Part shown: piece by piece, positions 3,701 to 64,000 of the stretch | Layout of the letters: each line of letters starts with the position of its first letter | How positions within the stretch are numbered: the stretch's first letter is position 1 | Source of the DNA: Botryllus schlosseri | Lineage: Eukaryota | Length of the DNA: 64,000 nt | Direction of reading: 5' to 3' | NCBI GenBank assembly: GCA_051294905.1 | Contig: CM119383.1 | Coordinates: 8,494,001-8,558,000 of the forward strand | Translations under genes and position numbers: made by a program | The notes under the pieces: model-generated | What the model was told of the DNA's origin: nothing | The model's database searches: none | Seen by the model: only the letters and a program-made list of their open reading frames with translations

Positions 3701-5273
3701 TTAGGTATCCCCTTGTGCGATGTTAACAGAATTGTTTGGGTGTGTTATTCTTCCTATGCTGTATAAGAAGTTTGATGCGCTAATTCAAAAATTCTTGCGG
3801 GTACATCTGCTAACACAATCAGTCTAAAGCTAAACTATCGTAGTGTCACTGCATATAAATAGTGTTTGCAGCAATTTGGAAATCCTATAGAAAACAATAT
3901 TGTACATCCGACTCAAGCTCGGAATACAAGGAATTGAATATTATATGGCTCGTGATTCAAAAGAAATAGCTACAAGTTTCTGAAAGGCTCACATGATAAT
4001 GGTTTAATATCAGAGTTGTCAGAGGTTTAGTCAACATGGGACAAGGTTTTTAAAAGGGCAAATCTACAATTATTGTACCTATAATGCAGCCGCACCTCCA
4101 AAGAACAATATTGTGTAATTCATGCTTTGCAATCACAATGCAATATCGCTCCCAGACCGGCAACTTATTGCCATGGCAGGATGACAGTGATGCAATAGTA
4201 TTGGTAATGGAGGTAATGAGCATGCCACAATTGGCTGAAACCATACCAAATTCAACAAAATGCAGTGAATTGCAGGAATAGGAAACACATTGCTGAAGAC
4301 CTATACAGAAATCAAATTACAATGGAAATAATATATTTCCCATGCCATTTAACTCAGGGTTCAAAAGTCAGAATGAGGTCACGACATATCACTAAGCAGT
4401 AATTTATAACAATCATATCACATCGGCATACCGTATATCACAACTCACAAGATATATATGTTTGCCTGAATTTGTTAAAATGCCTAACCGGGAACATATG
4501 TGTGAATGTTATTGGACTAGCTATGTCACCATCTCAATTTGCATTTGACACCAATCGGGATGAATAACAAAATTATCATCTGGCCAAAACATGACAATTC
4601 CATTCTCCCAACCTGCATATGTACAACAACCAAAACACAAAATATACGAGACCATCCGTTCCCTGTATGTATTGTACATAACAAGAATTCCACACAAAAT
4701 ATGGCTAGGCTATAATTGCAATATAATCGAATGCACATATGGTCATTACGTATTTTGAATTCAAATAATTAGTTAACATTATTCAGCTTTACAAGTGAAA
4801 TCTTTACCCCCATTTTCTGTTACAGTGCATTATTACAGTACATGATTATCGTGCATATTGAGATAATAAACCAATATTTCATACTCTGGGGGTATGTTGA
4901 CCGTGATGAATTGATGATGTCTCTCAAATTTACATTCTGTTGGAAAATGAAAATGTCTTCAGCAGATCTTTTTCAATTTTTTAAAGCAATTGCCAACGCA
5001 AAGCTGAGAAAATTCTATAGTACACTCCACGACTTGTCGATTTAAGAAATCATTGAATTCGTGGAATCTATGAATGGGGTAATGAACATACTTTCAAGGA
5101 CCCTATTGACATCAGGCTTATTTATTGCATAATACAGAGATTTTAAATTTAGTATCCCCAACCATCACCAATTGTGCAGGATAACTAACGCAAATCATCT
5201 TGACATGACTTACTGTTTCGTGTTGAATAGTTTCGTCTTCTGTATCCATGTCTGCCCGGTCCATTACAAACAT
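782..5273 (-). CDS. BTRC: beta-TrCP (F-box/WD40 protein FBXW1/11-like), 5' coding exons; gene continues beyond the left edge
   Basis: Exons with GT-AG ends and compatible phases: 5273-5214 ([20 protein letters not shown]), 2679-2395 (ends ...[18 protein letters not shown]), 1136-1028 ([36 protein letters not shown]), 968-782 ([62 protein letters not shown]). These match the D dimerisation domain and F-box of beta-TrCP. WD40 exons not seen in the window. The start ATG could be 5273 or 5264. Confidence 0.93.
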
Positions 5274-10933: not shown

Positions 10934-13900
10934 TCATTCCTTGTCCTTTTTGTCTTTCTTTTTGAGGAAGCTGAGCGAACGACGTTTCTGTTTCTTGCTT
11001 TCCTTCGGTTTTCCCTCTTTGTGCTTGCCTTTGGTTTCGGGCTTATGCTCGTCCGGGGTTTTCAGAGGACCCTCGTCTTCGGGCTGTGCTTTCGGGGCTG
11101 GGGTGAGAACCTCGCCGCTGCCTTTGCGCTGCGATTTTTTCTAGACGTAACGAAAGACACCAGAATTAGACATCGAAATGTCATGGGTATCAATGTAAAC
11201 CTACAATCATACATGATCTAATACATGTTAATATCCTCATATGCCGGTGATTGCGTAGACGCAATTATGGTTGGAGTTAACTGTGCGATTTTGGGTGCCC
11301 TAATAATATTTTCTGACCACACCATCGCAATTCATCAGGCCAGAGAAGGGTGGAGATCTCGCATCAATCTGACATCAGGTGAAACATGACTTTTCGCGCA
11401 CTATTAATCGCTGCAAGTGACTTGATCACTAGTGTAAGCATTAAGCAGCCTATAGATTTGTCAATAATGCTGATATACAGTCACTCACAAACACTAACAA
11501 AACTCCAAGCAAGTTGCTACAGAGATGAGAATTGAAGTGTGTGGTGAACACGCACAACAAAACATAAGTGCAACAATCGTGTCGTGATTGTGCTAGCCCG
11601 CAATCAGATATAAGCATGGATTCGGATTTTCAAGAAAGACATGAAATTTCTTTATTGTTTCAATCTTTATCTGACTATTGAACAAATATTAGTCATTACC
11701 GGTTTTAGCCTTGAATGTTCACACGATAAGAAAATATTCTGAACTTGAATTCACTCTAGGATTTGAAAATGTTAAATCCGCTCATAAACGACCCAAAACA
11801 CCGGACATGACAAAGGACAACAGTATTCAACATGTGGCCTAGTGATTGTGATGTAAAAGCTACCTTTGCTTTCTCCTTCGTAGGAGGAGACGGATCCGTC
11901 TGCAATTTGGTTGGTTTCGGCGTCTCTTCCTTGACCTCCACTGGTTTGTCAATGACGACTTGGGGAACAGGCTCGCGCTTCTCAGCCTCCGTCTCCACCG
12001 AAAGCGGCTCCGGAGCGATTTCAATTTGTACTTTATGTTCCACCTTTTCTGTTTCCTCCTGTTTGGAATCTGCGAATACACATATTGGCATGTGCGTAAG
12101 ACAGGGTTCTAACCAAGTCAATTTTACTTTTATAGCTTTGACCTGAATCAAGTCGAGTCATTTTCAATTCACCAAGCGATGTCGAGACTCGGGTCGACTC
12201 AAAGTCATATAATTTATTACTGTTCAGCACAGAGTTGTAACCAAGTCACAAGTCTCCGATTGACAAGTCAATCTCAATTTCCGAGTCCAAGTCAGTAAGT
12301 GGTATAAGGCCCTGCTAAGCTAAAAATCGCTATGGGGGAATTCATATCAGGCCTATTATATATGCACATGCACCTCTGTAAACAGTAAAACATCGGTACA
12401 AACACCATCGTACCCATGAGAGATCATCATCGTCTTTGGTTCATTAGCAATTTTTATCAGTTCAATACACCACAAAAATGCGATACAATGAAAAGACAGG
12501 GAGGTGTCGAAGCGACTTGGATTTGTCTATGGAATCAGACACCCACCTTGGCCTAGGCGATTTAAAGAGGAGGCATGCACACTGAATGAAAGTAAAGAAG
12601 ACAGTATAGAAAAAGAAGGCGACAAGAATAGGGCGGCATGTCATGGGAAGTGAGATCGATAGGTCAGTCGTGGTCCGGTAATCTTGAGGATGGACAGTAT
12701 TTATTTAATAGTAATTGCTTGAGTAATCTATGCAATCAGACACCCACCTTGGCCTCGGCGATGTAAAGAGGAGGCATGCACACTGAATGAATTGTAAAAG
12801 AAGATAGTATAGAAAAAAGCAAGTGACAAAAAATGGGGTGGCATGTCATGGAAGGCGAGATCGATAGGTCAGGTCGTGGTCCCGTAATCTTGAGGATGGA
12901 CTAGTATTTATTTAGTAGTAATAGACGACACGCACCATTAAAATTATCCCACTACACTCAGAGAGTTGACATGAAAATGAGCGCAACTGAAGTACTGCAG
13001 GGCTGGTATAGTTTACAGCGCAGGCGAATGAAACAACTGACGAAAAAGCTTTCTTACCCTCTTTCGGCTGGTCTGGCTCGTTGATTTCACCGACGCCGCT
13101 ATTTTCTTCCTTCAAGAAAACATCTGAAACGCAATCACAATACATATATTAGTATGCTACTTAAGGTCAGGATGAGGCAGATCAGTGCTGTTAGGTACGG
13201 AATATTTTGACAACTTAAGACGAGTGCCACAATTTTCTACTCGGACAGAATGGAAGCCAGCGCTTTCAAAAGCAGATCCAAACAGCCTCAAGTAGAAATG
13301 GAATGCCGAAAGCTATGAAAATGCGGCATCGAAAAGAAATTCGAGACAAGATTGCCAGATACATTTTTTTTCTCATAAGCACACGGTAAATTGCAACACT
13401 ATTCTACAAATAACAAGAACCCGAAGACTGCGCCGACCTTCGGCCTTGTCCGGTTCGGGTCGATCTCTCTGCGTGACTTCCAGCTTGTATTTCTCAATTT
13501 CCACATCGCTCACGCTCGCAAACGGATTTGGCGGACCGGTGACAATCGTCTGGCTGTGGTAGTCTCGCTGGATTATACCTTTGCTGGCGGTAAACACGCT
13601 GTCCTGTAAAGTAGAGGGATTGATTGACTGCAAGTCGAAACACGTGCTTATGCTGGCCACAACAGAACATTGCAGTTCTGGAGACGTCAATACAACAATT
13701 TCACATATAGAAAGTGTTTTAGCTTAAAAGATGATCAGTTAAACTATATAATGTAAACGTGGAATGGCAACGACCGATTTTGCAGCTTCGTTCCGCTTCG
13801 CTTAAGCTTTACTCAGACTTATTTTACGGCAGCTACTGTAGGATTTCTGGCAATCCAAAAGTTGTCTTCCAGAGCTCCGAATTTACTGAATCTGGCCTTG

Positions 13901-58172: not shown

Positions 58173-58543
58173 CAGTGTTGGGATGACTCGAGTCATGACT
58201 TGACTCGAGTCAGACTCGAGTCACTTTTTCGTATGACTTGACTTGACTCGAGTCACTTTGCAAAAATGACTTGACTTGACTTGACTCGGCGCTTCAAAAA
58301 TGCGGATTGACTCGTGACTCGGATCAAAATTTACAAGTCAATTTCAAGTCATCAAGTAAACGGTATCAATCAAATCAGTGTATTTTGGACATATGTTCGT
58401 ATTGTTCGCGATACGCCTATGTGCCGCTTGTGAGAGTATCCAGTCATTCACTGAATGTACGTTTGAATGATCCTCAATTATTGCATCACAAATATATTGA
58501 CCACAACGAAATGATCACAGGTTACGTTGTTGTTGTTGTAGTT

Positions 58544-58598
<55 letters not shown>

Positions 58599-59159
58599 AA
58601 GAATAATAATAATACAATAGCAATTAACATCTACGCTTCTTGGACGGCTCACTGCTAACATTGCGCAGTGATCACCTTTACCAACCCTCTTGTATGATTC
58701 AAATCCATATCAATTTGTTTCAACGTCTCGAGGCTTCGTATTCGATCCTAATGGCTGACATAATAACAGACTGTAGCATAGCTATACAGTTAGTCGCGTA
58801 TATTATTTGCGGTTCTACGTCTGCGTGATAGACGCCTTCTTGCATGCATATTCAACTTTATAAAGTATGTGTATGCATACATTAGTTATTTGATGCAAGA
58901 TAAATGGCAAATTATACTGTCTTTCACTCAGCTAGCAAAATGTAATTACTTCGAAAATTCAATTTGACTTGAATTATGACTTGACTCGTGACTCGACTTG
59001 ACTTGACTTGACTTGACTCGAGTCACATTCAAAAAACGAGTGACTTGACTTGACTCGAGTCACTTTCGAAAATCGATTGACTTGACTTGACTCGAGTCAA
59101 AATGTGCAATGACTCGAGATGACTCGTGACTCGAAGGTACTGACTTGATCCCAACACTG
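58173..59159. mobile_element. hAT-type element with GACTT/GACTCGAGTC subterminal arrays
   Basis: TIRs CAGTGTTGGGA / TCCCAACACTG; perfect TSD AAAATAAC (58165-58172, 59160-59167). Confidence 0.92.
58522..58612. repeat. (GTT)n(GTA)n(AAT)n compound microsatellite
   Basis: Directly visible; it produces the poly-Val ORF in the track. Confidence 0.95.
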
Positions 59160-59845
59160 AAAATAACCCATAATTTTGTCGTATTCACGTGATAATTTTG
59201 GACCCCCTGTGTTCTTCCAGGACCCAAGACTCTGCTACGAAGCTAGCACACTACTCGTTGCTCCTGAGCTGAGCCATCGTTTCTCCCTGGCGTGATTATT
59301 CCATTACAGTGCTACATATCCTCGCAATGCAAAATCTGAGGCTGATCTATCTGGGGTACAGGCCTAGAATAGTAGAAAATTCATGTTTTCGTAACCATAG
59401 TAGCTTTGGATTGATACCTGTTTTGTCAAATATCTCGCTCGGGAAGTCAGCAGCCTAAAGATTTCTATTTCTATTGCCTTTGCTCAAATGGAGAAAATGT
59501 TTTTGACCAAGCGCAGTGACTCGTGCGATTTGCTGTTGTCTGCAGTCTGCACCAGATAAAGGAAACAATGATTATAATGGTCCACTTTCCCCGCCGAGCG
59601 CCAAATGCGAGCTCTCCGCCGTCTCTGTGTTTATGTAATGTACCACAGTGATTTAGGTGAGGCGAAGTGCAGCAATTTTGCAATATGAATAAGAAAGCAT
59701 ATACTGGTACGGCGCCTATATTGTATTGTATAATGTATTATATGTATATACAACATATCATGGCAGAACTTCATCCACTTACCGGTATTTTATTATCGCT
59801 TTACAGCTTATTGCTTATAGTGTTTTGACACTGTCGTGTGTCAGG

Positions 59846-62464
59846 ATGGACGATTCTGCACAGAAACCATGCGTGCTGGAAGTAGCGATGGAAGAGTTTT
59901 ATGACGACGTGGAAGTTCAATCAATTATGCACGAAATCGAAGATGAAAATGATCCACCCGAAGAGTTATCCAAAATAGTTCATGTTACTGTTGCAATGGA
60001 AGAAGACGAAATCCTAGAATCTGACATGTTTTATGATTCGGATGGGCAGAATGTGAAGACCAAAAAAAGAGCAAAGCGCAAAAATCTTAAATCTGTACTA
60101 TCAACGCGAAAGCAATCAGACCACCCACCTCTTGCTAAATTTCGGAACAAGGAGAACATACTCGAAATGCTTTTACAGTCGATCTCTAAAACTGAAAAAG
60201 TTGTTGACGGTCTTGCCGGGGACAGAACATTTTTGCTGCAAAACAGTCACCGTAGAAGAGGGAAACGAGCTTTTCGGATTGACGATTACAAGCGTTGGAA
60301 TAACTCGTCGGTTAAAAGACGATATTTTACGCATGTCGACGGGGGATACAGGCCCGTGAAACTCATCCAAGGTGAATATTATAGCTCTGAGGCAAATCCA
60401 GAAACCGACTCCGATGGGAAACTACTCATTCAGCCTGAAGATCACAACGTTATTACTGTCACCATGTATTACGCATCACTGCCGCCGACTTGTCTCAAGC
60501 GCCGTATTTCCCTACTTGAGAAATATCCTGCAGAATTAACACCAGTTCAGGAAGATCTAATTATTGTCGAATACGCGGGATCTATGGATACTCAGCCAGA
60601 GAAGACTCCCAAGTCGGAACCGATCACGGGTAGCCAAGATGAAGACAATGATTCGCTTGACGATTTGGAGACAACAGCAGGCATTGAAAAATTCTATTCC
60701 GATAGCGAAAAATCTTGGATTGATAACAACGGAAATTTTCTGGAAAGAAATGAATTGATCGATCGCCTGCTTCATTCCCGCGCATCATTTGAGGAGATTC
60801 CTCTCGGAAAAAAAGAAAACGCTTGCTATATAGTGAATAATATCGAGAACCACGAAAGGGAGATTCAGGGAAAAGTGAGAAGCTATGTGGATGATTGCGG
60901 AGTGTGGAAACACGTGTCTGTGAAAAAATGTTGGTTCGTAAAAGTCAAAGGGAGATACGAAAATGTGAAGTTTGTAAACGGAAAGTATCAGATTATGAAT
61001 AGTCAAATACGGGCTACTGTTCGTCAACCTAAAGAGCGTGACATACTTGCCATGCTGAACGTATACGGCCGATTAAAACGCGATGAAAATTTCCGCCGAC
61101 GAATCAGTTGGATCGACACCTTCCCGCGTGGCGTAACACCTTTTCAAAAGCATATCGCAATTTTCGAGTATGTTGGAAACTATCCTGGGGCAAATACGAT
61201 ACCACATGGTAACACCAAGAAGTCAGATGCTTGCCCATATGTCCGCACACCGGGCCGTTACATGAAGACTATGAAAGAGCGTTTAGCATTCAAAACAGTG
61301 AAACAAGTCATTGATGAAGACCCATCAATTAGTATGTCTCCGAGAGAACTTAAAAAACTTCAAAATTTGCGGTACCGTAGCGCTTTGCGCATCGGCCCAC
61401 ATTCCGCAAAAAGTAAGGACCACACAAATATGATGCAAGAGCTACTTTCTTTAGTTCAAACTAATCCATTCGTGCAACAAGCCACGTATATCAAAAGGAA
61501 AGCTCCCTTTGTGATAGGATACACAAAAGAGCACACAAGCGCCTGGAGATATATTTGTTCGGAAAAATCGGGCCTTCAAAACGTCATGGGCATTGACTGT
61601 ACCATCAGTGTTGGACCGGTGCACCTTACTGTCATGACGTACCCACATCCCAACTTGCAATGCCGGGCCAACAATAGCAGCGCTATCATGATGGGTCCTG
61701 TTATGGCTCATGTTGATAAATCATGGTACGCGTACACCGCATTCTTCAGCCACATAAAAGAACAGCTTGAATTTCATGGTTCAAGGTCATTTGATGGCAT
61801 AACATTAGCGCTTGGCCCGAAGGAGGATGTGCTTTTGCTTGATGCCCTGAAATCCTGCTTTCCATCATCAAAATTGGGACATTGTATTGAACACATGGAG
61901 ACAGACCTTCGTAAATTTTTAGCTTCCGATATCGGCATGACTGATGGCGCGGTCAATCAGATCACAAAGGAAATATTTGAAGGTCTCATGTCATGCTGTC
62001 ATGAGTATGATTTTGACATGAAGCTCATCAACATGCAAACATCCTATGAAATTGTGAGTCCTAAACTAGGCAAATTCTTTGAAAAACTAGGGGAAGACAT
62101 CAAGACCAATTATTGGTTGCCATCATTGGATGGCATGCCATTGATCAAATGGTCCAACAGTTCATGCCCAGCACTCGAAAGTTTGAAAAACCATCTTGGT
62201 TCTGAATCTGCATCCCTAGTCAACATAATATTGAAAGTACAGCATGTTGCTGATGAACAATTAAACCATGAAATGCAAGCCATTGTTGACAAGGGTCCAT
62301 ACGAGCTAGCACCTCATGCGAAGAGGTTCCTGCACACTGAGGAAGATTGGCTTAAAAAATCGGCAAAAGACAAAAGTAAGACAGTCGATAATTTTCGGAG
62401 AGTAAGAACGGGCATGACTAAGGTGTTGACAGTAGATTCATCTAAAGATGACACTTTGGATTAG
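59846..62464 (+). CDS. Mutator/MULE-like transposase-derived protein (872 aa), candidate domesticated gene
   Basis: Uninterrupted 2619-nt ORF from the ATG at 59846, just after a CAG acceptor. C-terminal half has the motif order PHGN...PYVRT, GIDCT-x-S-x-GP..LTVMTY, MGPVMAH, LALGPKED..L.DAL..CFP, CIEH (CxxH), WSNSSC, KGPYEL, typical of MULE-related transposases. No TIRs or TSD seen around it. Confidence 0.8.
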   Translation: MDDSAQKPCVLEVAMEEFYDDVEVQSIMHEIEDENDPPEELSKIVHVTVAMEEDEILESDMFYDSDGQNVKTKKRAKRKNLKSVLSTRKQSDHPPLAKFRNKENILEMLLQSISKTEKVVDGLAGDRTFLLQNSHRRRGKRAFRIDDYKRWNNSSVKRRYFTHVDGGYRPVKLIQGEYYSSEANPETDSDGKLLIQPEDHNVITVTMYYASLPPTCLKRRISLLEKYPAELTPVQEDLIIVEYAGSMDTQPEKTPKSEPITGSQDEDNDSLDDLETTAGIEKFYSDSEKSWIDNNGNFLERNELIDRLLHSRASFEEIPLGKKENACYIVNNIENHEREIQGKVRSYVDDCGVWKHVSVKKCWFVKVKGRYENVKFVNGKYQIMNSQIRATVRQPKERDILAMLNVYGRLKRDENFRRRISWIDTFPRGVTPFQKHIAIFEYVGNYPGANTIPHGNTKKSDACPYVRTPGRYMKTMKERLAFKTVKQVIDEDPSISMSPRELKKLQNLRYRSALRIGPHSAKSKDHTNMMQELLSLVQTNPFVQQATYIKRKAPFVIGYTKEHTSAWRYICSEKSGLQNVMGIDCTISVGPVHLTVMTYPHPNLQCRANNSSAIMMGPVMAHVDKSWYAYTAFFSHIKEQLEFHGSRSFDGITLALGPKEDVLLLDALKSCFPSSKLGHCIEHMETDLRKFLASDIGMTDGAVNQITKEIFEGLMSCCHEYDFDMKLINMQTSYEIVSPKLGKFFEKLGEDIKTNYWLPSLDGMPLIKWSNSSCPALESLKNHLGSESASLVNIILKVQHVADEQLNHEMQAIVDKGPYELAPHAKRFLHTEEDWLKKSAKDKSKTVDNFRRVRTGMTKVLTVDSSKDDTLD

Positions 62465-62846
62465 TGTGCATGTATTTGTGACTTTGCTCCATTGTGCCGC
62501 AGTTATCGCACGTTCCTTATTAAAATACACTGACATTTAAAATTGCGTACTACTTTTCATGGTACTGACTACTTGATACTTTTTAGCATGAGTGCATATG
62601 GTATCATATTGAGGAAAGGCTTCTGCTGAATATTCACTACAGCTGCACATTGACATGAGACTTTTTATGGTCATCGTATGAATCTCATCAAATGGACATA
62701 GGATCCGCGATCGCTTAATTTGCTGGCAATCATTATAATCGTGTGCCCAGTTTTGCAAGAAATATTGTGTCAATGGAGGTTGTCTTATTGTGCAAAGACG
62801 AGCTCTCTCAGGATAATGAAATGGCTCGATTAAAATTGTGCGAAAC

Positions 62847-63187
62847 CAGGGTTGTAATGGAAGAAGACCAGACTTGGGTCAATATGTGTATTGACTCAAC
62901 TTGTACTCGAGTCAATTCTACAGAACTGGTTTCAAGTCTCGTGGACCCACACTTCAAAAATAGACACAGAAAATATTTGTTTCAATAATCGTGCCAAGAC
63001 TAAGTATATTATGTATGCGAGGCCTTCGACATCATCCAAAAGTTTCACAGAAGTGAGTTGAATCTGACTAGAACTCACTCTACAATGACTTGGACTCGGC
63101 CCAATGCTCCCTGACTTGACTCGGTGGTGAACTGGAAATGACTTGCATCCAAACCATGAAAGTCAAATTGACTTGGTTACAACCCCG
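62847..63187. mobile_element. hAT-type MITE with GACTT/GACTC repeats
   Basis: TIRs CAGGGTTGTAA / TTACAACCCCG; flanks TGCGAAAC/TGTAAAAC; related fragments at about 12100-12300. Confidence 0.65.
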
Positions 63188-63727
63188 TGTAAAACCTTTA
63201 GTCATCCTTGAAGTAAATCTAAATGCTTCTTATTAAAAGCATTCCCAACTTCAGGGTTGCCAAGCAGCGCAAACATACTCTCACTCTGTACTAAATATCT
63301 CAAACTACTCGTATGCTGACTATTGTGGCAGAAACCTTCCAACCAGTTAACTTCAATAAAGTCATATATATCAACATAATGAGCACATTACAGTTTATTA
63401 TCAGGAGTGTAGTGTAGAGGACAGATAGTCGAACGAAAATATAATTCATACAGGAAGTTTAAAATAGACAACATATTATTGCACCACAAAGCAAATTACA
63501 AGAACGACCACCAAGATAATACTACCAGAGATTATCTTGCCATAAACACAAAAATATCACTCAGTTCAATACAGCTGGAACAGAACAATGTAATCTTGGG
63601 TGATGTTTTAGCAGGAGTATAGAGCTATCCTGAAAATCAAAACTGGCGATGTCATGCGCAGAAAACGAATTTAACAATTTCATGAAAAATATGAAATGAT
63701 TATTCTAGCAATTCAGACGTGACAGGC

Positions 63728-64000
63728 TTATTTGAAACCGGAAAAATCTGTGCTGAAGGAATTTGTGATCGTTTTACCGCTAGCGGCTGATTGCCATGGA
63801 TCATTTTCCGGTAGACTTCCACTGAATGACGACATTCCGAATGGATCATTAGTCTGTGTCTTGGACGATCCTTTTTTTAATACTGATGCAGAATTAGCCG
63901 TTTGCGCTAGATTAAACATTCCAAAGGGATCCTCTGACTGTGTTTTGGTTGAGCCATTATTTAATACCGATGTGGGAATTGACGGATGAGCTGGCTTTGG
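63728..64000 (-). CDS. Terminal coding exon (partial) of a protein with DPF/DPW motifs, probably an endocytic accessory protein
   Basis: Open frame from the window edge to TAA at 63730-63728: PKPAHPSIPTSVLNNGSTKTQSEDPFGMFNLAQTANSASVLKKGSSKTQTNDPFGMSSFSGSLPENDPWQSAASGKTITNSFSTDFSGFK*. Low complexity with two DPF and one DPW; AATAAA on the minus strand near 63395. The gene cannot be named from this fragment. Confidence 0.65.
   Translation of the reverse strand, partial: PKPAHPSIPTSVLNNGSTKTQSEDPFGMFNLAQTANSASVLKKGSSKTQTNDPFGMSSFSGSLPENDPWQSAASGKTITNSFSTDFSGFK

What the first reader, a model, noticed from the sequence alone, without database searches (positions are those of the whole stretch)
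59600..62530. Candidate domesticated Mutator/MULE-like transposase gene with a broken catalytic triad
Seen: an intact 872-codon ORF in a region where the other transposon ORFs are decayed; a plausible non-coding first exon and intron (donor CTG|GTACGG at 59706/59707, acceptor CAG at 59842-59844); ATTAAA shortly after the stop; no TIRs or TSD. The first catalytic Asp is kept (GIDCT, 61595) and so is CxxH (CIEH), but where this group normally has G-T-D the protein has G-P-K (61814-61822), and where it has N-N-x-E-S it has NSSCPA (Pro at 62168). Known: MULE transposases need D-D-E, and domesticated MULE derivatives such as FHY3/FAR1 act as transcription factors. Inference: a host gene that lost catalysis but kept the fold, with an added acidic N-terminus resembling an activation domain. 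Motif assignment is from memory of the family, not from an alignment.
Basis: partly seen in the sequence, partly recalled or inferred. Interest (0 to 1): 0.8.

Follow-up and report, generated by a model that had tools for sequence, protein, structure and literature searches.

The report
Domesticated dead Mutator transposase gene
A sea-squirt gene descended from a Mutator-type jumping-gene enzyme has lost two of its three cutting residues. It has kept, and duplicated, its DNA-binding domain and sits at the same chromosomal spot in at least three species, so it is a host gene, most likely a DNA-binding regulator.

Summary

- **ORF.** The 872-codon ORF (59846-62464, +) is the only ORF of at least 150 aa in the 64-kb window.
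- **Family.** Pfam misses it, but it belongs to a family of about 980 animal proteins. Of 56 relatives, 43 hit the MULE domain, and many carry OTU, Ulp1 or PHD domains.
- **Fold.** Its AlphaFold model matches the ISCth4 (IS256) transposase, FAR1/FHY3/FRS, NOF and ZSWIM proteins.
- **Catalytic residues.** The family consensus is GxD(R/K)TFN ... G(S/T)D(E/D)E ... CxxH ... NNNCES. This protein keeps D584 and CxxH but has K659 and P775.
- **Orthologues.** Three orthologues (Styela clava LOC120339136 and two Logan assemblies, 37-45% identity) share the losses: R/P, R/P and E/K. The four form a 100%-supported clade on a long stem.
- **Synteny and selection.** In the window, in Styela and in one Logan contig, the last exon of synaptojanin lies convergently 0.7-1.3 kb downstream. 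dN/dS is 0.21 for the one unsaturated pair. There are no TIRs, whereas the nearest DDE-intact relative has perfect TIRs of at least 119 bp.
- **New here.** The duplicated N-terminal module is a CG-1-like (CAMTA-type) DNA-binding domain of the WRKY/GCM1 clan.

Still unverified: the 5' exon and intron, expression, and the transcription-factor role.

The parts
59846..62464 (+). Intronless CDS of 872 codons plus TAG: a domesticated Mutator-superfamily transposase gene.
   Evidence: establish the ORF. The orthologues P0001, P0006 and P0155 are 37-45% identical, and all have uninterrupted CDSs.
59846..60055 (+). Acidic N-terminus predicted as disordered (residues 1-70; 23 D/E, 2 K/R).
   Evidence: Composition is and pLDDT is below 35. 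The acidic character is shared by all four orthologues.
60056..60145 (+). Basic patch KTKKRAKRKNLK... (residues 71-100; 12 K/R), NLS-like.
   Evidence: The orthologues have KLKRKHDK, PKRKRKYK and SRKRKL at the same place. Nuclear import is inferred, not tested.
60140..60586 (+). Module 1 (residues 99-247), a diverged duplicate of the CG-1-like domain. It keeps DxxxW (D147-W151, codons 60284-60298) and EYxG but has lost PxGxKEN and PHGN.
   Evidence: blastp of module 1 against module 2 gives 27% identity and E 2e-17. The duplicate is present only in the four-member clade; other relatives match only from about residue 292 onwards. pLDDT is 75-87.
60593..60721 (+). Acidic linker between the two modules (residues 250-292; 12 D/E, 4 K/R), predicted as disordered.
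60737..61225 (+). [quoted passage not shown]
   Evidence: The domain model has pLDDT 95. The top 12 Swiss-Prot AFDB hits are all CAMTA CG-1 domains. The Atlas CG-1 clusters give TM 0.56/0.51 and rmsd 2.8 A over 113 aa. The top PDB hits are Ssr4, GCM, NAC, WOPR and WRKY. All 16 family-conserved positions are kept in all four orthologues.
61226..61465 (+). Helical linker between the DNA-binding domain and the core (residues 461-540).
   Evidence: One search shows helices at 470-539. dN/dS is 0.13-0.15 between L001 and L003.
61466..62425 (+). Catalytically dead RNase H-like Mutator/IS256 core with an all-alpha insertion (residues 541-860).
   Evidence: Foldseek matches ISCth4 transposase at E 1e-5 and FRS/FHY3/FAR1, NOF, alpha3, ZSWIM and IS256 at E 5e-12 to 1e-5. 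Of 56 relatives, 43 hit PF10551 and 21 hit PF00872.
61595..61597 (+). D584, the retained first catalytic Asp (GIDCT) on strand beta-1.
   Evidence: The family column is D in 116 of 125. Strand 580-589 is, and the codon was verified.
61820..61822 (+). K659, in place of the second catalytic Asp (family G-S/T-D-E/D-E; here G-P-K-E-D), just after strand beta-4.
   Evidence: The column is D in 105 of 125, and the orthologues have R, R and E.
61883..61894 (+). Retained CxxH motif (C680-I-E-H683), a Mutator-superfamily signature.
   Evidence: C is 98% and H 94% conserved in the family, and both are kept in all four orthologues.
62168..62170 (+). P775, in place of the catalytic Glu (family NNNCES; here NSSCPA), at the start of helix 775-784.
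   Evidence: The column is E in 97% of the transposon relatives, and the orthologues have P, P and K. The neighbouring positions N772, S776 and N778 are changed in all four.
62519..62524 (+). ATTAAA, 55 nt after the stop codon; a possible polyadenylation signal.
   Evidence: The sequence is present. Its use is untested.
59600..59845 (+). Unverified.
   Evidence: The motifs are present. The four orthologues have no conserved acceptor before the ATG. No RNA evidence was available.
63728..64000 (-). Synteny anchor, not part of the gene: the last coding exon of a convergent synaptojanin-like gene (...NDPF...NDPW...NSFSTDFSGFK*). It runs off the end of the window.
   Evidence: tblastx of the window against the L003 flank gives E 3.8e-11, and L003 against the Styela flank gives E 6.4e-6. 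The peptides are shown. The Styela neighbour is a 1550-aa product with Syja_N, Exo_endo_phos and DUF1866 domains.

Best explanation
This is a host gene that arose in an ascidian ancestor by domestication of a Mutator-superfamily (MULE) transposase. The source was the animal lineage whose elements typically encode PHD/OTU or Ulp1 domains, a CG-1-like DNA-binding domain and a DDE core.

Shown:
- The protein keeps the whole transposase fold and the CxxH motif.
- It keeps every conserved residue of the DNA-binding domain.
- It has lost the second catalytic Asp (K659) and the entire NNxES Glu motif (P775).
- It has lost the protease and PHD domains and the terminal inverted repeats.
- It has gained a second, diverged copy of the DNA-binding domain and an acidic N-terminus followed by a basic patch.
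- It is fixed next to synaptojanin in at least three species and evolves under purifying selection.

Inferred:
- It enters the nucleus through the basic patch.
- It binds specific DNA sites through the CG-1-like module or modules, using the DxxxW-stabilised recognition loop.
- The dead RNase H-like core serves as a dimerisation or DNA-clamping scaffold.
- The acidic regions recruit the transcription machinery, as in FHY3/FAR1.

It cannot cut or join DNA by the DDE two-metal mechanism.
For: Family and fold:
- The representative search found 980 relatives.
- Of 56 relatives, 43 hit PF10551 MULE (best E 4.8e-8), 21 hit PF00872, 22 hit OTU and 6 hit PHD.
- The AF2 model has pLDDT above 90 over most of residues 290-860.
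- It matches ISCth4 (IS256) transposase, and FRS11/FRS5/FHY3/FAR1, NOF-FB, K. lactis alpha3, ZSWIM9/3/1 and IS256 transposases.

Dead active site:
- The triad is D/K/P against the family D/D/E, and the orthologues share the loss as D/R/P, D/R/P and D/E/K.
- Secondary structure places D584 on beta-1, K659 after beta-4 and P775 at the head of the post-insertion helix.

Host gene:
- The four sequences form a 100%-supported clade on a stem of 1.07 substitutions per site, nested among DDE-intact transposases.
- All four CDSs are intronless and intact at 37-68% pairwise identity.
- dN/dS between L001 and L003 is 0.21 overall and 0.14-0.18 in the core and in module 2.
- The terminal exon of synaptojanin lies convergently 0.7-1.3 kb downstream in the window, L003 and Styela.
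- There is a single copy in the window and no TIRs.
- The nearest DDE-intact relative, P0007, sits between perfect TIRs of at least 119 bp.

DNA binding:
- The module 2 model has pLDDT 95.
- It matches CAMTA CG-1 domains, and the Ssr4, GCM, NAC, WOPR and WRKY structures.
- DxxxW is retained, the motif that Holm 2022 reports as stabilising the WOPR recognition loop (PMC9252788).
- All 16 conserved positions of the DNA-binding domain are kept in all four orthologues.
- The acidic N-terminus plus basic patch is conserved in character.
Against: - There is no expression data for this species. The 5' exon/intron is unsupported, and L001 cannot be shown to be an mRNA.
- Only four clade members are known. 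Two come from unidentified sequencing runs, so the age and taxonomic breadth of the gene are uncertain.
- Synteny rests on a single short terminal exon of 30-45 aa, because the window and L003 both end there. The direct window-to-Styela match is weak (E 0.19).
- dS is saturated for every pair except L001 and L003.
- DNA binding, nuclear localisation, activation and dimerisation are all inferred.
- D584, E660 and D661 remain acidic, so residual metal binding is not formally excluded.
- The CG-1 link is mainly structural. Pfam CG-1 hits are sub-threshold (6 of 62 relatives, best E 0.0069, and none for the window's own module).
Confidence: 0.8

Rival explanations
1. It is a domesticated transposase that acts as a transposon tamer rather than a gene regulator. 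Its conserved DNA-binding domain would still recognise the ends of related PHD-OTU MULE elements. The dead protein would occupy those sites or poison transposase multimers, repressing transposition much as KP-type P-element repressors do.
For: - Every conserved position of the transposase DNA-binding domain is retained while catalysis is lost.
- The multimerisation-competent core is retained.
- Per an earlier scan note (s1-236789, not checked here), an intact PHD-OTU Mutator element exists in the same genome.
- DDE-intact relatives with long TIRs exist elsewhere.
Against: - The clade sits on a long stem and is only 25-34% identical to the nearest transposases. Recognition of present-day transposon ends is therefore doubtful.
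- The acidic N-terminus and the duplicated domain look like additions for a new role.
- No binding-site comparison was possible.
Confidence: 0.15
2. It is still a nuclease or recombinase that uses a non-canonical active site (D584 with E660/D661 or other acidic residues), like the K. lactis alpha3 domesticated MULE, which still cuts DNA.
For: - D584, E660 and D661 are acidic and lie in or next to the active-site strands.
- CxxH is retained.
- K. lactis alpha3 appears among the structural matches.
Against: - D2 is replaced by a basic residue in three of the four orthologues, and by Glu in Styela.
- The whole NNxES motif is rewritten: N772, E775, S776 and N778 are changed in all four.
- The only nearby Glu (E778) is not conserved, being Q/Q/G in the orthologues.
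Confidence: 0.03
3. It is a decaying or non-autonomous transposon copy whose ORF is intact by chance or recent origin.
For: The window is transposon-rich, and a MITE-like element ends 440 bp upstream of the proposed gene start. The gene is intronless like its transposon relatives.
Against: - The chance of an open 872-codon frame is about 1e-21.
- The same catalytic losses occur in four intact orthologues at 37-68% identity.
- dN/dS is 0.21.
- The synaptojanin neighbour is conserved.
- There are no TIRs.
Confidence: 0.02

Closest known systems
FHY3 / FAR1 / FRS proteins of plants (domesticated MULE transposases acting as transcription factors)
   Same: Both have an N-terminal DNA-binding domain of the WRKY/GCM1 clan followed by a MULE RNase H-like core. 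Both are immobile single-locus host genes. They are the best structural matches in Swiss-Prot (E 5e-12 to 1e-7).
   Different: This is an independent domestication in ascidians from a different MULE lineage (PHD/OTU/Ulp1-bearing). The DNA-binding domain is the CG-1-like type with no evident set of four metal ligands, not the FAR1 zinc finger, and it is duplicated in tandem. Pfam finds no SWIM finger. The function is untested.
Animal PHD-OTU / Ulp1 MULE transposons (the parent family; for example P0007, P0003/P0004, P0014)
   Same: They share the CG-1-like domain, the helical linker, the core and the CxxH motif at 20-34% identity. They are the nearest branches in the tree.
   Different: These relatives keep D-D-E, and many also carry OTU, Ulp1 or PHD domains. 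P0007 is flanked by perfect TIRs of at least 119 bp. The window gene lacks all of these and has an extra DNA-binding module and an acidic N-terminus. I could not assign the family to a named MULE clade (Phantom, Rehavkus/NOF and so on; PMC6446971), because no reference sequences were available.
CG-1 DNA-binding domain of CAMTA transcription factors (PF03859)
   Same: It is the best structural match for the N-terminal module. All of the top 12 Swiss-Prot hits are CG-1 domains, and the Atlas gives TM 0.56/0.51 with rmsd 2.8 A over 113 aa. Both share the DxxxW motif and an RR-x-(S/Y)-W ... (E/H)-Y pattern. Both belong to the WOPR/NAC/Ssr4 subgroup of the WRKY/GCM1 clan (PMC9252788).
   Different: Sequence similarity is below Pfam thresholds (6 of 62 relatives, best E 0.0069). 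Here the domain is attached to a transposase core rather than to TIG, ankyrin and IQ domains. No link between CG-1 and transposases was found in the searchable literature.
ZSWIM1/3/9 of vertebrates and K. lactis alpha3 (other MULE-derived host genes)
   Same: They are MULE-derived host proteins with the same core fold.
   Different: There is no orthology. ZSWIM proteins carry SWIM fingers. To my knowledge, alpha3 is still catalytically active in mating-type switching.
ISCth4 / IS256 bacterial transposases
   Same: They are the only solved structures that match the core (E 1e-5, probability 1.0). They have the same RNase H fold with an alpha-helical insertion.
   Different: They are bacterial and catalytically active, have a different N-terminal DNA-binding domain, and are 10-13% identical.

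Membership tests
Mutator (MULE / IS256) transposase superfamily: homology of the core | RNase H-like core homologous to PF10551 / PF00872 | tested here: met
   The window protein itself has no Pfam hit. Of 56 clear relatives, 43 hit PF10551 and 21 hit PF00872. The model matches ISCth4, IS256, FRS and NOF.
Mutator (MULE / IS256) transposase superfamily: active transposase | Complete D-D-E catalytic triad | tested here: not met
   The triad is D584 / K659 / P775 against family columns that are 95-97% D, D and E.
Mutator (MULE / IS256) transposase superfamily: active transposase | CxxH motif downstream of the second Asp | tested here: met
   C680-I-E-H683 is conserved in all four orthologues.
Mutator (MULE / IS256) transposase superfamily: mobile element | Terminal inverted repeats and 8-10-bp target-site duplication; multiple copies | tested here: not met
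   The best inverted match between the flanks is 10 nt at E 0.65. There is one copy in the window. Whole-genome copy number could not be tested.
Mutator superfamily | N-terminal DNA-binding domain of the WRKY/GCM1 clan (Babu et al. 2006, PMC1702500) | tested here: met
   The top PDB matches for module 2 are Ssr4, GCM, NAC, WOPR and WRKY, and CAMTA CG-1 heads the AFDB and Atlas lists.
Domesticated transposase (host gene) | Orthologues in other species at a syntenic position | tested here: met
   The terminal exon of synaptojanin is convergent downstream in the window, L003 and Styela L002. This rests on a single short exon.
Domesticated transposase (host gene) | Purifying selection on the coding sequence | tested here: met
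   dN/dS is 0.21 at dS 0.95 for L001 against L003. The other pairs are saturated but all keep intact ORFs.
Domesticated transposase (host gene) | Expression as a cellular mRNA | not testable with these tools
   No RNA-seq access. Styela LOC120339136 is a RefSeq model, but its supporting evidence could not be seen.
FHY3/FAR1/FRS family | FAR1-type zinc-finger DNA-binding domain plus C-terminal SWIM finger; orthology with the plant genes | tested here: not met
   There is no PF03101 or PF04434 hit at E up to 1. The DNA-binding domain is CG-1-like. The clade nests among animal transposases. It works like FHY3 but is not a member of that family.
CG-1 domain (PF03859) | Pfam profile match above the gathering threshold | tested here: not met
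   The window module has no hit. Six of 62 relatives hit only at E 0.0069 or weaker.
CG-1 domain (PF03859) | CG-1 fold with a DxxxW-stabilised recognition loop | tested here: met
   D350-C-G-V-W354 is nearly invariant in the family. The motif is described in PMC9252788.
CG-1 domain (PF03859) | Sequence-specific binding to CGCG-type boxes | not testable with these tools
   This needs SELEX, DAP-seq or EMSA.

The most novel reading that the evidence does not exclude
The CG-1 DNA-binding domain, known so far only from CAMTA calcium-responsive transcription factors, would be the standard DNA-binding domain of a large animal MULE transposon family of about 1000 proteins. CAMTA's domain and this ascidian gene would then be two independent outputs of one transposase/transcription-factor domain lineage. 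The ascidian gene would be a lineage-specific transcription factor with tandem CG-1-like domains and a dead transposase scaffold.
Probability: 0.3. Interest if true: 0.65.

Novelty: new member of a known kind. Interest (0 to 1): 0.55.

Why it matters
Domesticated transposases are a recurrent source of regulators such as FHY3/FAR1, ZBED, THAP and ZSWIM proteins. Well-supported animal MULE domestications with synteny, selection and a defined catalytic loss are fewer, and I found none reported for tunicates.

This case is unusually clean. The DNA-binding positions are all kept, the active site is rewritten and the fold is preserved, so it makes a direct, testable prediction: a DNA-binding protein that does not cut DNA.

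The by-product may interest more people. The N-terminal domain of this whole transposon family is CG-1-like. That links the CAMTA DNA-binding domain to Mutator transposases, extending the WRKY/GCM1 transposon-to-transcription-factor theme of Babu et al. 2006 and Holm 2022.

Tried and rejected
- **Direct searches of the window protein.** Pfam gave nothing relevant, with no MULE hit, and the PDB sequence search gave nothing. Membership had to be shown through relatives and structure.
- **Family profile against PDB sequences.** It found only the OTU domains of relatives.
- **Terminal repeats.** The GACTTGACTCGAGTCA repeats on both sides of the gene were checked as possible foldback arms and rejected. 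The upstream block is a self-contained 985-bp element with its own TIRs (58174-59158), and the downstream matches are isolated degenerate copies. The flanks share no TIR.
- **5' intron.** The upstream sequences of the four orthologues show no shared acceptor. L001 and L003 align only across the CDS, so L001 cannot be used as an mRNA proxy.
- **E778 ('PALES') as an alternative catalytic Glu.** Rejected: it aligns with a family Asn and is not conserved in the orthologues.
- **More orthologues and species identity.** A profile search of the four orthologues added none. A search with the module alone found nothing, probably because of the tool's length filter. The window protein is not on record. 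The SRA run ids appear in no paper.
- **Upstream synteny.** No match between species.
- **Named MULE clade.** Assignment to Phantom, Rehavkus/NOF or another clade was not attempted for lack of reference sequences.
- **Foldseek PDB search of the module.** It gave only noise, because no CG-1 structure has been solved.


Full report
**1. Observation**

The window holds one long ORF, 59726-62464 (+). From the first ATG at 59846 it is 872 codons, ending in TAG at 62462-62464. No other ORF in the 64-kb window reaches 150 aa. With the window's stop-codon frequency of 0.054, an open frame of this length has a chance probability of about 9e-22.

- GIDCT, with the D584 codon at 61595-61597.
- GPK at 61814-61822.
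- NSSCPA, with P775 at 62168-62170.
- CIEH at 61883-61894.
- ATTAAA at 62519-62524.
- The GT at 59707 and the CAG at 59842-59844.

tblastn finds no second copy in the window.

**2. What family it belongs to**

Pfam and the PDB sequence search give nothing for the protein itself. An exhaustive phmmer search of 1.8 billion representatives finds 980 relatives at E up to 1e-3, and 93 at E up to 1e-30.

All but the closest few match only residues of about 292-863. Named examples come from abalone, a nemertean, a mantis shrimp, amphioxus and a mussel.

Of 56 full-length relatives scanned one by one:
- 43 hit PF10551 MULE (best E 4.8e-8).
- 21 hit PF00872 Transposase_mut (best E 3.9e-9).
- 22 carry an OTU protease domain.
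- 6 carry a PHD finger.

Others carry a Ulp1/C48 protease.

An AlphaFold2 model built on a 66-sequence alignment is confident over most of residues 290-860. Foldseek places it as follows:
- Nearest among solved structures is the ISCth4 (IS256-family) transposase, at E 1e-5 and probability 1.0.
- Nearest in Swiss-Prot are FRS11, FRS5, FHY3, FAR1, the Drosophila NOF-FB protein, K. lactis alpha3, ZSWIM9/3/1 and IS256-type transposases, at E 5e-12 to 1e-5.

The language-model search also returned mostly MULE clusters. The protein is therefore a member, by descent, of the Mutator superfamily.

The nearest DDE-intact relative is P0007, with PHD, OTU, a CG-1-like domain and the core. It lies on a contig between perfectly complementary inverted repeats of at least 119 bp. 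So the relatives include real transposons.

**3. The catalytic triad**

I aligned 125 relatives. The family signature is (V/I)LG(V/I)D(R/K)TFNL ... G(S/T)D(E/D)E.A(L) ... C..H ... WTNNN(C)ES.N(H).

| Position | Family | Window |
|---|---|---|
| First Asp | D in 116 of 125 | D584 |
| Second Asp | D in 105 of 125 | K659 |
| Glu | E in 89 of about 100 filled rows | P775 |

The predicted secondary structure puts these residues where an RNase H-like DDE enzyme has them. D584 lies on strand 580-589. K659 comes just after strand 651-654. P775 is at the first turn of helix 775-784, after the all-alpha insertion.

In the relative P0004, the D2 and E positions fall at about profile positions 232 and 340 of PF00872. 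From memory, this corresponds to the IS256 D233/E341 positions.

It is not a shifted catalytic residue.

**4. Host gene, not a transposon copy**

Three sequences stand far above the rest:
- P0006, 883 aa, from Logan run SRR23343704.
- P0001, 904 aa, from Logan run SRR32906212.
- Styela clava LOC120339136 (P0155, 900 aa).

They are 37-45% identical to the window protein over its full length. All four CDSs are uninterrupted.

On a maximum-likelihood tree of the core, the four form a clade with 100% SH-aLRT support. The clade sits on a stem of 1.07 substitutions per site, next to DDE-intact transposases.

The four share the catalytic losses: D/K/P, D/R/P, D/R/P and D/E/K.

An audit of positions at least 85% conserved among the transposon relatives gives three results:
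- All 16 such positions in the DNA-binding module (319-467) are kept in all four orthologues.
- Most fold-defining positions of the core are kept: T586, T595, G617, P618, H622, F672, P673, C680, H683, L692, F711, W769, G817, L821 and W835.
- D659, N772, E775, S776 and N778 are changed in all four.

dN/dS for the one pair that is not saturated (L001 against L003, dS 0.95) is 0.21 overall. It is 0.14-0.18 in the core and 0.15-0.18 in module 2.

*Synteny.* In Styela the gene is followed 1.0 kb downstream by a convergent 1550-aa synaptojanin gene with Syja_N, Exo_endo_phos and DUF1866 domains. The C-terminal exon of that gene is recognisable on the minus strand at three loci:

| Locus | Position of the exon | Distance downstream | C-terminal peptide |
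|---|---|---|---|
| Window | ends with a stop at 63728-63730 | 1.26 kb | ...NDPF...NDPW...TNSFSTDFSGFK* |
| L003 | 4384-4520 | 0.73 kb | ...DPF...NDPW...PGSFSTDFSNLNMK* |
| Styela L002 | from 13712 | 1.0 kb | ...NDPF...NDPW...PNSFSTDFSKMSFNQF* |

The tblastx E-values are 3.8e-11 for window against L003 and 6.4e-6 for L003 against Styela.

The flanks of the window gene share no inverted repeat longer than 10 nt. The GACTTGACTCGAGTCA repeats upstream belong to a separate 985-bp element with its own TIRs.

**5. The N-terminal half**

Residues 1-70 are strongly acidic (23 D/E, 2 K/R) and predicted as disordered. Residues 71-100 are basic (KTKKRAKRK...). All four orthologues share this layout.

Two homologous modules of about 150 aa follow: residues 99-247 and 298-445. 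Only the second module has counterparts in the transposon relatives, so the duplication is specific to the domesticated clade.

Module 2 was modelled alone with 62 sequences, giving pLDDT 95. The structural evidence is:
- Its 12 best Swiss-Prot matches are all CG-1 domains of CAMTA factors from plants, mammals and C. elegans (E 2e-3 to 6e-2).
- The ESM Atlas gives CG-1 clusters first (TM 0.56/0.51, rmsd 2.8 A over 113 residues).

These are the proteins that Holm (2022, PMC9252788) grouped with CG-1 as a subgroup of the WRKY/GCM1 clan. That paper notes a DxxxW motif that stabilises the DNA-recognition loop.

The family has a nearly invariant D-D-C-G-x-W (D350...W354 here). Module 1 keeps D147-Y-K-R-W151.

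Six of 62 relatives also give sub-threshold Pfam CG-1 hits, more members than for any other family in that scan.

Mutator transposases are known to carry WRKY/GCM1-clan DNA-binding domains (Babu et al. 2006, PMC1702500). Neither that paper nor any other I could search connects CG-1 with transposases.

**6. Mechanism**

*Shown:*
- A conserved, syntenic, selected gene.
- A Mutator fold with two of three catalytic residues replaced.
- An intact DNA-binding module plus a diverged duplicate.
- Loss of the protease and PHD domains and of the TIRs.

*Inferred:*
- Nuclear import through the basic patch.
- Sequence-specific DNA binding by the CG-1-like module or modules.
- The dead core acting as a dimerisation or DNA-clamping scaffold.
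- The acidic regions acting as activation surfaces, as in FHY3/FAR1.

The main rival is a transposon-taming role, in which the protein binds the ends of related MULEs. I cannot separate this rival from the best explanation with sequence alone. Residual catalysis and 'decaying copy' are poorly supported.

**7. Limits**

- Only four clade members are known, two of unknown species.
- That this genome is an ascidian comes from an earlier scan note and from the Styela orthologue, not from my own identification.
- Synteny rests on one short exon, because both the window and L003 end there.
- The named MULE clade was not determined.

**8. Verdict**

It is a new member of a known kind (domesticated MULE transposases), with one unusual feature: tandem CG-1-like DNA-binding domains. 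That feature also ties the CAMTA DNA-binding domain to a large animal transposon family.

Noticed in passing
window 58174-59158: A self-contained MITE- or foldback-like element of about 985 bp. It has terminal inverted repeats CAGTGTTGGGAT... / ...ATCCCAACACTG and subterminal arrays of GACTTGACTCGAGTCA (17 motif hits in the window against 0.7 expected). A (GTT/GTA)n microsatellite sits inside it at 58517-58606. It ends about 440 bp upstream of the proposed gene start.
   Followed up: partly
window 63728-64000 (-): Last coding exon of a synaptojanin-like gene, with NDPF / NDPW endocytic-adaptor-type motifs and a conserved C-terminal NSFSTDFS. It converges on the transposase-derived gene and runs off the end of the window.
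   Followed up: partly
window 63466-63505; L003 4257-4296: A 40-nt non-coding block that is 87.5% identical between the window and the L003 species, although synonymous sites are saturated between them. It lies in the shared 3' intergenic region between the two convergent genes and is probably part of the synaptojanin 3' UTR. It was not found in Styela.
   Followed up: partly
L004 1-119 and 6124-6242: The closest DDE-intact relative (P0007, with PHD, OTU, a CG-1-like domain and a MULE core, from an ENA metagenome contig) is flanked by 100% complementary inverted repeats of at least 119 bp. This looks like a very young element. The left arm is cut by the contig end.
   Followed up: partly
window 63085-63188 and 12101-12208: A short dispersed repeat, 69% identical over 114 nt in opposite orientation, lies downstream of the gene.
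   Followed up: no
family-wide (alignments A2, A3): Five of 62 module sequences give weak hits to Pfam DUF7747 (best E 0.0015) and two to DUF6843 (best E 7e-5). These DUFs may be further relatives of the CG-1-like transposase domain.
   Followed up: no
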